Source: Oikopleura dioica
Taxonomy: Eukaryota > Animalia > Chordata
DNA: 64,000 nt
Direction of reading: 5' to 3'
Assembly (NCBI GenBank): GCA_907165135.1
Contig: OU015567.1
Location: 14,198,001-14,262,000, forward strand
Part shown: one piece after another, positions 13,825-16,800 of the stretch
How the letters are laid out: every line of letters begins with the position of its first letter
Numbering within the stretch: position 1 is the first letter of the stretch
Translations under genes and position numbers: made by a program
The notes under the pieces: model-generated
The model's database searches: none
What the model was told of the DNA's origin: nothing
What the model saw: the letters and a program-made list of their open reading frames with translations, nothing else

Positions 13825-16800
13825 ATGGAATCGTACTTAGACCAAATTCACAGCAAATCCGATCTTGACATTTCCCGTCAAATCTCTCTCCTTCCTTCCA
13901 CTCGAGAGCTCAGTGAGGGATTCAATCTTGATGTCGGTATTGCTGCGTTGGAGCTGTTTATCAGAGAGAATTTCACAGGCCCGACCAGGGCTGGTAAATT
14001 AGCGCACTATTTTCTCTCGAAGAAAAAAAATTAGTGCACTAATTTTTTAGAGACATTTTCGCGTCTTTCGCGCCTTTAGTGCACTAAAATGACACTAATT
14101 TTTCCTCTTGGGGAAATTAGTGACTTTTCGAGAGCTGATCAGCACTAAAGACGCGAAAAAGAGGCTCTTTTTCATCATCCAATGGGCTCTTCCCGGATGA
14201 TAGTTTCATGGAAGACGATTTTTGTCAGGGAAGAATTTCTTCAAACTGAAACTGCTAGATATTTAAAAATCAATGAATCATAAATATGACACAATTTAAT
14301 TTTTAAAAATCGTTTTTAGCCCCCACCAGATTAAGTCAGCTAAGGTTATCGATCATCCTCTTTCACCTGAGCGTATTAGTTCTCTGAAACAAGTACTTTT
14401 CAGTTTTGCGAAAAAATATATTTCCAGTGTTCTAATTTAGAAACAAAAAAGTTGAAAGGAATAAAAGTCAACTTTTGTTGGAAATTCTTTTGTCGAATAT
14501 TTTAATGATGAGCTAAGATAAGCTTTGCTAGGGAGGTCTTCTCCTAATTTTTTATCGCAGGGCCATCCGCAGCTGGATCTTCCTGCTTTTCTTCATTTTT
14601 TGCCTTTCTTCTTCTTGTCATCGTCCGACAACTTCTCATCGCTGTCCTCAACAGTCTCTGAAGCTGGAGCAGCCTTGACTGATACGTTCTACTTTCCGGG
14701 AACGGTCGGACTCATTACCAAAATTTTTGGTAACCCATTACCAATTTTCGGTTGTCGATTATCAATTTAAAAAAGCTAGGCGAATTTTTTGTCACAGCGG
14801 AAACGCGATTCATTTCAATTTTTTAGGCGATTAGGCGAAAATTAGGCGAAAAGCGAAAATTAGGCGAAATTTTCGCCTAGATCTGCCTAGATTTCGCCTA
14901 GATCTGCCTAGATTTCGCCTAAATTCGCCTAATTTCTTCGCCTAGGCTAAATTCAAGGCGAATTTTCATTTTCGCCTTGTCGCCTAGCTTCGCCTAAGGC
15001 ACCAGTATGAGACTAGGCTAGGCTAGGCTAGGCGAAATTTCAAGAGTCCTCCGAGGAATTCGCCTAGCCTAGCCTAGCCTAGCTTTTTAGGCGAATTCGC
15101 CTAGGCGATTTCGAACCCTGAGTGCGATCTTTTCCCCTACTTTCGTGGTCTAAGAGCTCTTCTCAATATCTTTACATAATTCTTTATTTACAGAATCATA
15201 TTATATTATTATATTTATATTTATATTATTATATTTATTATATATTATATATATTTGACAATATAGAAGGGAGGTCTCCTCCCAAATTCACGCTTACTTG
15301 ATAACTGCTAATGAAGAACTCCTCCCAAAGTTTTTTATTAGTTTTCTAGGATATAGCAATGCTATATTTTAAGAGTAAAATATATCGGGAGTAAATCTGC
15401 TTTCTGAATTATAAAGTAAGCATGAACTTGGGAGAAGATCTCCCTTCTGAATTGTGAAATAAATATGATTTTGTTAATTATGAATTATATTAACAATCTG
15501 CACAAGGCTGCTCCTGCTACAGACTTTTGAGGACACCGAAGATTAGTCGAACGACGACAAGAAGAAGATTGACAAGAAAGGGAAAATGCAGGAAGAACAA
15601 GCTTCAATAAAAAAATTCGGGAGAAGACCTCCCTTAGAAAGCTAATCTTAGTCTAAGAGTCTAAGCTTATCATTCAAATCCAGCACAGAAAGAGTTGCAA
15701 ACAAAAATGAATTCAATTTTTACCCTATATAATATAAGCTATATTTGTTACTTTATATTTATAAAGAAAATTAACAAATGGATTGATAAAGTCTTTTTTG
15801 ACTTTATATTAAAATTCACGCCCTCGATTACCCAATCCACTTTATTGAAACTCTTTGAAATTCTAATATTATCGAAGTTTGAAATTCTCAAACTTACGTA
15901 TTCTTCAGAATTAAAGAGCCCGCGCTCATTGGCGGGCCAATCAGCAGCTCTTATTTTCGACACTTTTCGAGACACACGCGAAAGAGACGCGAAAGTCACT
16001 AAAGTCTCGACAAAATAAATTCGCGCACTAATTTTAGTGCACTAAAAATTTTCGACAGATTTTAGGACGCGAATTTACCAGCCCTGGGCCCGACTGTATT
16101 TGATCGCCTGCCAAGCTGGGCTCAAGCTAAGGAAGTAATTCACATTGATGGAGAACCAACATCTCCTCTTGCAGTTGCAATTCCGCTACTTTTGTACGCA
16201 AGGGATGTTTTTGCGGCGATTCTTGATGATACTCGTATGTTTTCAAGTTAAAATAAGACCATCTTTGCTAATAAAATCTCAGAGGATGAAGCAACTAAGG
16301 CAGTAACTCACTGGTGGCTTTGGAGATATGCTCAAGTGATGCAGCAAATCGTCGGTTCTGATAAATGTCCCTCGCTTCTCAAACTTTTCTCAGAAGCCTT
16401 CTCCTTTATTCAAAAGTCGTGCATCATGGCGGAACCTGGCACTAAGTTGCTCTTTCTCATCGAGGCCGCTCATACGACCCTCGATTTTTATCAATACGAC
16501 GCGGCAGTCAAATGCATCAACGAGTTCCAGGCGTTCTATGGAAAGACATTCTCACTTTCTGGAGCTCTTGGAAAAAGAACGCGCTTCCAGCAAGACAGTC
16601 TTGCGCAGCTTTATCTCAAGGTCGAAAATGATGATTCGAAGAAGCTGGAAAAGTCGAAATACGACTGTGTCAAACGAAACGGAAGTAAAGTCATTGATGT
16701 TGCACTTGAAGACGAATCAGTTATGAGGTAATTCCTGTTCTTTTAAAATATTTGTGGCCCTTAAAAGGGCCGGTTTTTGCTAACAGGAAAGACAAGTGAA

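What the first reader, a model, noticed from the sequence alone, without database searches (positions are those of the whole stretch)
13978..16094. A hAT transposon built to be an intron: TIR-encoded GT and AG leave exactly 21 nt in frame in TTC27
Seen: the element interrupts the conserved NFTGP motif. The left TIR contains CTG|GTAAAT and the right TIR contains TTTACCAG|CCCTG. Splicing 13994-16081 leaves 8+5 nt of TIR plus the 8-nt TSD = 21 nt, reading [15 protein letters not shown] and continuing into the conserved DGEP...LLLYAR exon. Because the TIRs are reverse complements and hAT TSDs are 8 bp (established), any insertion in either orientation would be frame-preserving, provided the retained 21 nt make no stop. 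Inference: a cargo-carrying (2.1 kb) introner-type hAT family that creates introns and 7-residue insertions, distinct from short MITE introners and from near-perfect co-option of host splice sites.
Basis: partly seen in the sequence, partly recalled or inferred. Interest (0 to 1): 0.9.

Follow-up and report, generated by a model that had tools for sequence, protein, structure and literature searches.

The report
Young hAT transposon splitting TTC27 exon
A 2.1-kb cut-and-paste transposon recently landed inside the first coding exon of the TTC27 gene of the tunicate Oikopleura dioica (Okinawa reference). Its ends carry splice-like signals that could remove it in frame, but no RNA evidence was obtained, so it is either an intron being born or a broken gene copy.

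Summary
A 2,101-bp element (13986-16086) has perfect 15-bp terminal inverted repeats (CAGGGCTGGTAAATT) and a perfect 8-bp target duplication (GGCCCGAC). It interrupts TTC27 right after the invariant N-F/W-T-G-P motif. Two sister-lineage metagenome contigs (about 90% identical) and a more distant one (72%) carry the uninterrupted exon with GGCCCGAC once, so this is a real, young insertion.

GT at 13994 and AG at 16080-81 sit inside the repeats. Joining 13993 to 16082 leaves 21 nt (TRAALGP) in frame, in either orientation.

- I got no RNA evidence.
- Only one copy of the family could be reached.
- The "cargo" is non-coding palindromic and low-complexity DNA.
- Sixteen AGs inside the element score as well as or better than the repeat-borne acceptor, one only 57 nt from the donor.
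- A related element in the same window would leave 20 nt, which shifts the frame.
- A 3n footprint arises by chance in 3-13% of random repeats.

This scan has already noted dozens of similar exonic hAT insertions elsewhere in this genome, all without RNA proof. Precedents are maize Ds splicing, introners, Fritillaria MITE introns and SOS splicing. Verdict: an ordinary young insertion with a testable intron-birth reading.

The parts
13825..13985 (+). TTC27 coding exon, 5' part (ATG at 13825), up to and including the left TSD copy. It ends in the invariant NFTGP motif.
   Evidence: Translation. tblastn of Styela, Ciona and Clavelina TTC27 ends at 13983. The P0001/P0002 orthologues start with the same MESYL....
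13978..13985 (.). Left copy of the 8-bp target-site duplication GGCCCGAC
   Evidence: It is present once at the empty site in L001/L002.
13986..16086 (.). Non-autonomous hAT-like DNA transposon, 2,101 bp, 36% G+C
   Evidence: TIR and TSD. No Pfam domain in its ORFs. No Rfam family in 13300-15190. No other copy in the window.
13986..14000 (+). Left terminal inverted repeat CAGGGCTGGTAAATT, with an imperfect extension to 14021
   Evidence: (pair I2)
13994..13995 (+). Candidate splice donor GT inside the left TIR (CTG|GTAAAT)
   Evidence: It scores 6.7 bits, the 59th percentile of 37 inferred native donors. It is the best GT in the element on this strand.
13999..14087 (.). Left subterminal copies of the palindromic 12-mer TTAGTGCACTAA (3 copies). 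Probably transposase-binding repeats.
   Evidence: All 5 window matches with at most 2 mismatches lie within about 100 bp of the element ends.
14049..14050 (+). Competing acceptor AG 57 nt downstream of the TIR donor. Using it gives a stop codon after 9 codons.
   Evidence: It scores 7.7 bits against 5.6 for the TIR acceptor. The reading frame was checked on the sequence.
14490..15670 (.). Interior: a long imperfect palindrome (arms about 14513-14657 and 15521-15651) enclosing TTCGCCTAGG-type short repeats and an A+T-rich stretch
   Evidence: pairs I1, I3-I5, I8; families D1-D3.
16020..16045 (.). Right subterminal copies of the 12-mer (2 copies)
16072..16086 (-). Right terminal inverted repeat (AATTTACCAGCCCTG on the + strand)
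16080..16081 (+). Candidate splice acceptor AG inside the right TIR (TTTACCAG|CCCTG)
   Evidence: It scores 5.6 bits, the 38th percentile of inferred native acceptors. Sixteen internal AGs score as well or better.
16087..16094 (.). Right copy of the TSD GGCCCGAC
16095..16234 (+). Remainder of the ancestral first coding exon (TVFDRLPSW...DGEP...LLLYAR...DDT)
   Evidence: It is contiguous with the 5' part in P0001/L001/L002.
16235..16282 (+). Native 48-nt GT-AG intron of TTC27
   Evidence: Frame-consistent candidate
16283..16727 (+). Next TTC27 exon
   Evidence: Orthologous ORFs P0282 and P0283.
16728..17408 (+). 681-nt TTC27 intron holding a histone H4 gene (16802-17113) on the minus strand
   Evidence: The same arrangement is seen in L001.

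Best explanation
A non-autonomous hAT-superfamily DNA transposon was cut and pasted into the first coding exon of TTC27 in the lineage, or only the haplotype, of the Okinawan Oikopleura dioica reference individual. It duplicated the 8-bp target GGCCCGAC. This much is shown.

The insertion is young: the TIRs and TSD are perfect, and sister lineages lack it.

Read straight through, the transcript stops 16 codons into the element. The allele can therefore make TTC27 only if the element is removed from the RNA.

The most likely rescue route is inferred, not shown. It is ordinary spliceosomal use of the strong GTAAAT donor in the left TIR (13994) with the YAG in the right TIR (16081). That gives an mRNA with a 21-nt footprint, TRAALGP, inserted just after the intact NFTGP motif at the start of a length-variable linker.

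I expect this junction to be used for at most part of the transcripts, competing with nearer acceptors inside the element. The allele would then be a tolerated hypomorph or a nascent intron.

I see no evidence that the element evolved for this purpose. The frame-neutral footprint looks like a fortunate property of this TIR.
For: - Anatomy of TIR, TSD and subterminal repeats.
- Empty orthologous sites in L001, L002 and L003.
- The gene is TTC27.
- Donor at the 59th and acceptor at the 38th percentile of 37 inferred native short-intron sites in the window. No better donor exists in the element.
- The same gene already carries a 681-nt intron, so long introns are processed here.
- The footprint is stop-free and independent of orientation.
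- The insertion point lies at the edge of an indel-rich linker, and the invariant N-W/F-T-G-P motif stays intact.
- The rest of the gene is open and homologous through to 19211.
- A second young hAT splits a highly conserved stretch of the essential EFTUD2 gene in the same window, and the scan's notes list many more. This is easier to understand if RNA-level removal is common in this genome.
- Published precedents: introners (PMC9860276, PMC12130899) and Fritillaria MITE-derived introns (review PMC11282704).
Against: - No RNA read, transcript contig or transcript-based protein covering the junction was obtained.
- Sixteen AG sites inside the element match or beat the TIR acceptor. The one at 14050 would make a 57-nt intron, close to the species' median of 49 nt (PMC8008620), and leads to a premature stop.
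- Both TIR splice sites would be buried in a 16-bp perfect stem if the TIRs pair (-53.7 kcal/mol for the two 61-nt ends).
- The reference comes from a single male (PMC8008620), so a heterozygous null allele is possible.
- The public annotation, built with RNA-seq hints, has no intact TTC27 model. The N-terminal exons lie inside a 589-aa product that starts in the upstream NEK-like kinase gene, and the C-terminal part is a separate 509-aa gene.
Confidence: 0.45

Rival explanations
1. Broken allele. The insertion is a very recent, probably heterozygous, loss-of-function or strongly hypomorphic variant caught in the one sequenced animal. Transcripts are retained, mis-spliced (for example 13994 to 14050) or degraded, and function comes from an empty allele.
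For: - The reference is a single-individual assembly (PMC8008620).
- The TIRs and TSD are perfect, so the insertion has had no time to be purged.
- Stronger and nearer decoy acceptors exist, and a stop follows quickly.
- The splice sites lie in a potential stem.
- There is no clean public gene model.
- Exonic placement is not clearly enriched. Two of three young TIR+TSD elements in the window are exonic, in a very gene-dense genome.
- Earlier follow-ups on similar loci reached the same view.
Against: - The scan notes many such insertions in essential genes (EFTUD2 here; POLA1, CDC23 and NVL elsewhere). That would be a heavy recessive load if all were nulls.
- The TIR donor is as good as native donors.
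Confidence: 0.38
2. Structure-triggered, non-spliceosomal excision ('SOS splicing'). Pairing of the TIRs in the pre-mRNA recruits an AKAP17A/CAAP1/RTCB-type pathway. This cuts out the element at varied positions in or near the TIRs and leaves mixed small indels, only some of them in frame.
For: - The pathway is described in C. elegans and human cells for exonic DNA transposons and depends on ITR pairing (PMC12779559).
- The two ends here can form a duplex of -53.7 kcal/mol with a 16-bp perfect stem.
- It would also explain tolerance of the EFTUD2 element, whose TIR has no AG.
Against: - The pathway has not been shown in tunicates.
- I did not look for the factor genes.
- In the published cases only a minority of products are in frame.
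- There is no RNA evidence here.
Confidence: 0.1
3. Dedicated introner family. This hAT family has been selected to carry GT and AG in its TIRs, so that every insertion in either orientation makes a spliceable intron plus a 7-residue insertion. It populates exons genome-wide.
For: - The orientation-independent, stop-free 21-nt footprint.
- A native-grade donor.
- Notes of other CAGGG-ended exonic families in this genome.
- Introners derive from many TE superfamilies, and a tunicate case (Styela clava) is reported (PMC12130899).
Against: - Only one copy was seen. There is no second copy in the window or among the JGI metagenome hits.
- The chance expectation of the footprint property is 3-13% per TIR.
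- A related TIR in the window gives 20 nt.
- The acceptor is mediocre and there are many internal decoys.
- At 2.1 kb the element is about 40 times the typical intron of this genome.
Confidence: 0.1
4. Assembly artefact: the element was wrongly placed in the exon.
For: None specific. No DNA run holds more than 0.57 of the sampled words of the stretch.
Against: - The exact 8-bp TSD flanks exact TIRs at a site that is intact in relatives. This is the signature of real transposition.
- Several DNA runs hold more words than the flanks alone can supply.
Confidence: 0.02

Closest known systems
Maize Ac/Ds (hAT) and dSpm elements spliced out of exons (Wessler and colleagues, late 1980s; from my own knowledge, not re-read here)
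   Same: A non-autonomous hAT element in a coding exon has termini that supply splice sites. Removal leaves a few element and TSD bases, so the protein carries a small insertion and the allele is leaky.
   Different: Those cases have RNA proof, and the acceptor often lies outside the TIR. Here both sites lie symmetrically in the TIR and nothing is shown at RNA level. The host is an animal, not a plant.
Introners (Micromonas and Aureococcus, Huff 2016; surveys by Gozashti 2022 and 2025, PMC9860276, PMC12130899)
   Same: A DNA transposon with TIR and TSD whose insertion into an exon can create a spliceosomal intron. Hosts are aquatic. A tunicate example (Styela clava) is reported.
   Different: Introners are defined by many near-identical copies that are annotated and spliced as introns. 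They are usually short and are removed exactly, with one site carried and one co-opted from the TSD. Here there is one copy of 2.1 kb, a 21-nt footprint and no splicing evidence.
MITE-derived non-canonical introns of Fritillaria borealis (Henriet 2019, as summarised in PMC11282704; see also PMC13326754)
   Same: The host is a larvacean tunicate. The introns carry TIRs at lineage-specific positions, and the splicing machinery tolerates transposon ends.
   Different: The Fritillaria introns are mostly AG-AC or AG-AT and are removed by a modified U2 system. Here the candidate sites are canonical GT-AG and the element is large.
SOS splicing of exonic DNA transposons (Zhao et al. 2025, PMC12779559)
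   Same: An exonic DNA transposon has base-pairing terminal repeats, and its removal from the mRNA leaves small indels that are sometimes in frame.
   Different: SOS junctions rarely use GU-AG and are heterogeneous. The pathway is untested in tunicates.

Membership tests
hAT superfamily DNA transposon (non-autonomous) | 8-bp target-site duplication | tested here: met
   GGCCCGAC is present on both sides and single at the empty site in L001/L002.
hAT superfamily DNA transposon (non-autonomous) | Short TIRs (about 10-25 bp) beginning with the YARNG-type motif (from my own knowledge of hAT termini) | tested here: met
   The 15-bp perfect TIR starts with CAGGG.
hAT superfamily DNA transposon (non-autonomous) | Subterminal short repeats near both ends (transposase-binding type) | tested here: met
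   The five TTAGTGCACTAA-like 12-mers in the window all lie within about 100 bp of the ends.
hAT superfamily DNA transposon (non-autonomous) | An autonomous partner with the same TIR that encodes a hAT transposase (BED finger, DDE/RNase H, hAT dimerisation domain) | not testable with these tools
   The element holds no transposase. The rest of the genome could not be searched by DNA. The window has no other copy of the TIR.
hAT superfamily DNA transposon (non-autonomous) | TSD consensus nTnnnnAn (from my own knowledge) | tested here: inconclusive
   GGCCCGAC has A at position 7 but G at position 2. One site cannot test a consensus.
Introner / introner-like element | The element is removed from the mRNA as a spliceosomal intron | not tested
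No transcript-derived protein was found.
Introner / introner-like element | Many near-identical copies occupy intron positions in different genes | tested here: inconclusive
   No second copy was found in the 64-kb window. The nine JGI metagenome hits to the TIR pattern were chance matches. The genome itself was not searchable.
Introner / introner-like element | The element carries or creates functional splice sites at or near its ends | tested here: met
   This holds at sequence level only. Donor 6.7 bits (59th percentile), acceptor 5.6 bits (38th percentile) of inferred native sites.
Introner / introner-like element | The insertion created a new intron position absent from relatives | tested here: met
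   The exon is continuous in three related lineages and in TTC27 of other animals. This is conditional on splicing.
SOS-splicing substrate | An exonic DNA transposon whose terminal repeats can base-pair in the RNA | tested here: met
   Duplex of -53.7 kcal/mol with a 16-bp perfect stem.
SOS-splicing substrate | Heterogeneous non-GU-AG junctions dependent on AKAP17A, CAAP1 and RTCB | not tested
   There are no RNA data, and the factor genes were not sought.

The most novel reading that the evidence does not exclude
Okinawan Oikopleura dioica hosts active hAT families, this one included, whose TIRs encode both splice sites. Full-size (kb-scale) elements landing in exons in either orientation are then spliced out, leaving a fixed in-frame peptide footprint. 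That would be a chordate 'introner' system that creates both introns and short protein insertions, caught in the act in the reference individual.
Probability: 0.12. Interest if true: 0.8.

Novelty: new member of a known kind. Interest (0 to 1): 0.45.

Why it matters
If carriers splice the element at 13993|16082, this locus would be a dated, polymorphic example of intron birth from a DNA transposon in a chordate. The ancestral state is preserved in sister lineages, and the protein consequence is defined: seven residues next to an invariant motif.

Together with the many similar exonic hAT insertions noted across this genome, it would make a long-argued question directly testable with RNA-seq that already exists. 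The question is whether transposons seed introns in animals, and whether the spliceosome or an SOS-type pathway buffers them.

If it is not spliced, it is simply a young deleterious insertion in one sequenced animal.

Tried and rejected
1. RNA and DNA reads. RNA runs of the species exist as raw reads (X4-X6 bulk oligo-dT, X1-X3 single cell), and DNA runs hold the stretch (X25-X28).

2. Transcript-derived or annotated proteins.
- A 69-aa exon-1 query found only sister-lineage genomic ORFs.
- Two profile queries built to reach full-length or fused models found TTC27 of other animals and exon-3 ORFs of related lineages. They found neither this genome's 589-aa model nor its 509-aa model.
- The exhaustive representative search found no full-length Oikopleura TTC27.

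3. Rebuilding the public 589-aa model from its range and length. More than 3,000 exon chains fit, so nothing can be concluded.

4. Other copies of the family. The TIR-plus-subterminal pattern in JGI metagenomes gave nine chance hits in G+C-rich, unrelated contigs. The window holds no other copy.

5. Coding cargo or a structured RNA in the element: none found.

6. The share of words in the DNA runs (0.48-0.57, against 0.40 for the flanks alone). This is compatible both with the element being present at about 2% divergence and with flanks plus stray family words, so it is not decisive.

7. My first ab initio intron set was too noisy and I discarded it. The PWM used comes from a stricter set of 37 putative short introns. 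It is rough and gives only percentile-level statements.
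Full report
**What is there**

- CAGGGCTGGTAAATT lies at 13986-14000.
- Its reverse complement lies at 16072-16086. These are the only exact copies in the window.
- The arms extend imperfectly to 47 nt at 77% complementarity.
- The 8-mer GGCCCGAC flanks the element at 13978-13985 and 16087-16094.
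- The element is 2,101 bp and A+T-rich (36% G+C against 42-45% around it).
- All five window matches to the palindromic 12-mer TTAGTGCACTAA (at most 2 mismatches) lie within about 100 bp of the two ends. That is the usual look of subterminal transposase-binding repeats.
- The interior is a long imperfect palindrome around short TTCGCCTAGG-type repeats.
- Its ORFs have no Pfam match, and 13300-15190 has no Rfam match.

It is therefore a non-autonomous hAT-like element. Its interior is non-coding filler, not "cargo".

**The host gene**

The ORF starting at ATG 13825 reads MESYLDQ...[11 protein letters not shown] and runs into the element, where it stops after 16 more codons. Downstream of the element the same frame continues as TVFDRLPSW...HIDGEP...LLLYAR.

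tblastn with ascidian TTC27 proteins aligns residues up to about 101 to 13927-13983 and residues from about 104 onward to the sequence just after the element. It then continues through exons to about 18920. The best profile hits are all named TTC27.

My gene model:
- Ancestral exon 1: 13825-13985 plus 16095-16234.
- Native introns: 16235-16282, 16728-17408, 17603-17643, 17884-17925, 18319-18378 and 18634-18683.
- The 681-nt intron 16728-17408 holds a histone H4 gene on the opposite strand.
- The stop codon lies at 19209-19211.

**The insertion is real and young**

The exon-1 ORF query found two metagenome ORFs. P0001 reads ...[33 protein letters not shown]..., and P0002 reads ...ENFTGPCSFSSFPSW....

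Their contigs L001 and L002 are 90% identical to the window flanks and colinear across the site. The nested H4 gene is called on L001; L002 ends before it. L003 is 72% identical. In L001 and L002 the site reads CACAGGCCCGACTGTATTT, with GGCCCGAC once.

The element therefore entered an uninterrupted coding exon after these lineages split. Its perfect TIRs and TSD say this happened recently.

**Organism**

The exact H4 protein maps to GCA_907165135.1, record OU015567.1, at 14,208,802-14,221,113. I recognise that accession, and the 16.16-Mb record fits, as the Okinawan Oikopleura dioica assembly OKI2018_I69. That assembly was made from a single male, with a median intron of 49 nt and an RNA-seq-hinted AUGUSTUS annotation (PMC8008620). 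The scan's earlier notes name the same genome.

**The splice arithmetic**

GT at 13994 (CTG|GTAAAT) and AG at 16080-81 (TTTACCAG|C) lie inside the TIRs. Joining 13993 to 16082 keeps 8 + 5 TIR bases plus the second TSD copy. That is 21 nt, reading [15 protein letters not shown].

Because the first 15 bases of both ends are exact reverse complements, the same 13 bases remain in either orientation. They contain no stop triplet in any frame.

**Is it more than chance, and is it design?**

Among random CAG-starting 15-mers of window composition, 13% offer some GT/AG pair with a 3n footprint. With a GTR donor and a YAG acceptor the figure is 3%.

My scan for TIR+TSD elements found three young ones in the window:
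- This element.
- A 1,562-bp element at 3478-5039 (TIR CAGAGTTCGAAAT, TSD GTCCAAAA). It splits the conserved ...SIWAFGP|[11 protein letters not shown]... stretch of EFTUD2 on the minus strand. Its TIR has a GT but no AG.
- A 355-bp element at 8618-8972 (TSD ATCAATTC), just downstream of a gene that ends at 8562. Its TIR CATGGCTGTTGATT matches ours at 10 of 14 positions. It has the same GT/AG layout shifted by one base, giving a 20-nt frame-shifting footprint.

So a close relative of this TIR is not frame-neutral, and another exonic hAT cannot use TIR-borne GT-AG at all. With a single reachable copy of this family, "built to be an intron" is not shown.

**Would the spliceosome do it?**

I inferred 37 short introns in the window from ORF continuity, seeded with the TTC27 introns, and made rough position weight matrices.
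- The TIR donor scores 6.7 bits (59th percentile). No GT inside the element on this strand is as good.
- The TIR acceptor scores 5.6 bits (38th percentile).
- Sixteen AGs inside the element score as well or better. These include 14050 (7.7 bits), only 57 nt from the donor, and 15908 (9.8 bits).

In a genome whose introns are mostly about 50 nt, pairing 13994 with 14050 looks at least as natural as a 2,088-nt intron. That pairing gives a stop after nine codons.

The two ends can also form an RNA duplex of -53.7 kcal/mol, with both splice sites inside a 16-bp perfect stem. This would hinder spliceosomal recognition. It is also exactly the trigger described for spliceosome-independent "SOS splicing" of exonic DNA transposons in C. 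elegans and human cells (PMC12779559).

In favour of rescue:
- The same gene already carries a 681-nt intron.
- The seven extra residues would sit immediately after the invariant N-W/F-T-G-P motif, which stays intact.
- They fall at the start of a linker whose length differs by up to about 16 residues among homologues.

**RNA evidence: none**

RNA runs of this species exist as raw reads.

Protein-database routes to transcripts or gene models failed.

The public gene table shows no intact TTC27 model:
- A 589-aa product with a kinase domain spans window 11894-16731. This is the upstream NEK-like kinase fused to the TTC27 N-terminal exons.
- A separate 509-aa TPR product spans 17446-19211.

The exon structure of the 589-aa model could not be recovered, because thousands of chains fit its length. 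The annotation therefore neither supports nor refutes the proposed intron.

**Population evidence: weak**

Four DNA runs hold 0.48-0.57 of the sampled words. The flanks alone would give 0.40. The element or relatives of it are probably present in them, but zygosity is unknown.

**Context from this scan**

Many earlier notes on other DNA of the same genome describe young hAT elements in coding exons. The genes include POLA1, CDC23, SS18, PQLC1, NVL and others. One MITE has symmetric TIR-borne GT-AG sites and a 42-nt footprint. None has RNA proof. This finding is one more instance of that pattern, not a new kind of observation for the scan.

**Comparison with what is known**

In mechanism, the nearest precedent is the splicing of maize Ds (a hAT element) and dSpm out of exons via sites in their termini, which leaves small footprints. 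This is from my own knowledge.

In concept it matches three published cases:
- Introners (PMC9860276; PMC12130899, which validates a tunicate case in Styela clava).
- The MITE-derived introns of the larvacean Fritillaria (PMC11282704).
- SOS splicing (PMC12779559).

It meets the structural hAT criteria that could be tested. It does not yet meet the defining introner criteria of proven splicing and many copies at intron positions.

**Verdict**

| Reading | Probability |
|---|---|
| Young hAT insertion whose TIR sites allow at least partial in-frame rescue | about 0.45 |
| Plain broken allele | about 0.38 |
| SOS-type excision | about 0.10 |
| Dedicated introner family | about 0.10 (a subset of the rescue readings) |

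Novelty: new member of a known kind. Interest is moderate, because the decisive test needs only RNA-seq runs that already exist.

Noticed in passing
window 3470-5047: A second young hAT-like element (1,562 bp, TIR CAGAGTTCGAAAT, TSD GTCCAAAA) splits the conserved ...ARSIWAFGP|[19 protein letters not shown]... stretch of the essential spliceosomal GTPase EFTUD2 on the minus strand. Its TIR has a GT but no AG. The scan already noted it as s1-360612.
   Followed up: partly
window 8610-8980: A third young element (355 bp, perfect 14-bp TIR CATGGCTGTTGATT, TSD ATCAATTC) lies just downstream of a gene ending at 8562, so it is in the 3' UTR or intergenic. Its TIR matches the TTC27 element's at 10 of 14 positions. 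The equivalent GT/AG pair would leave 20 nt, not a multiple of three.
   Followed up: partly
window 11894-19211 (L014 gene table): The public annotation of GCA_907165135.1 seems to mis-model this region. A 589-aa product with a kinase domain runs from the NEK-like kinase start (11894) to a stop at 16729-16731 inside TTC27. The TTC27 C-terminal half is a separate 509-aa gene starting at 17446. Homology supports one TTC27 gene from 13825 to 19211.
   Followed up: partly
window 16728-17408; L001 1237-1548: A histone H4 gene (16802-17113, minus strand) is nested in a 681-nt intron of TTC27. The same arrangement is kept in a sister-lineage contig about 10% diverged.
   Followed up: no
window 13406-13409: The stop codon TAA of the NEK-like kinase overlaps a consensus-like donor (AGA|GTAAGT). 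This may explain why the gene predictor ran on into TTC27.
   Followed up: no
window 14490-15670: The interior of the element is itself a long imperfect palindrome with several copies of a GGGAGAAGAnCTCCC-like palindromic motif. It may be a nested foldback element or a rearranged deletion derivative.
   Followed up: no
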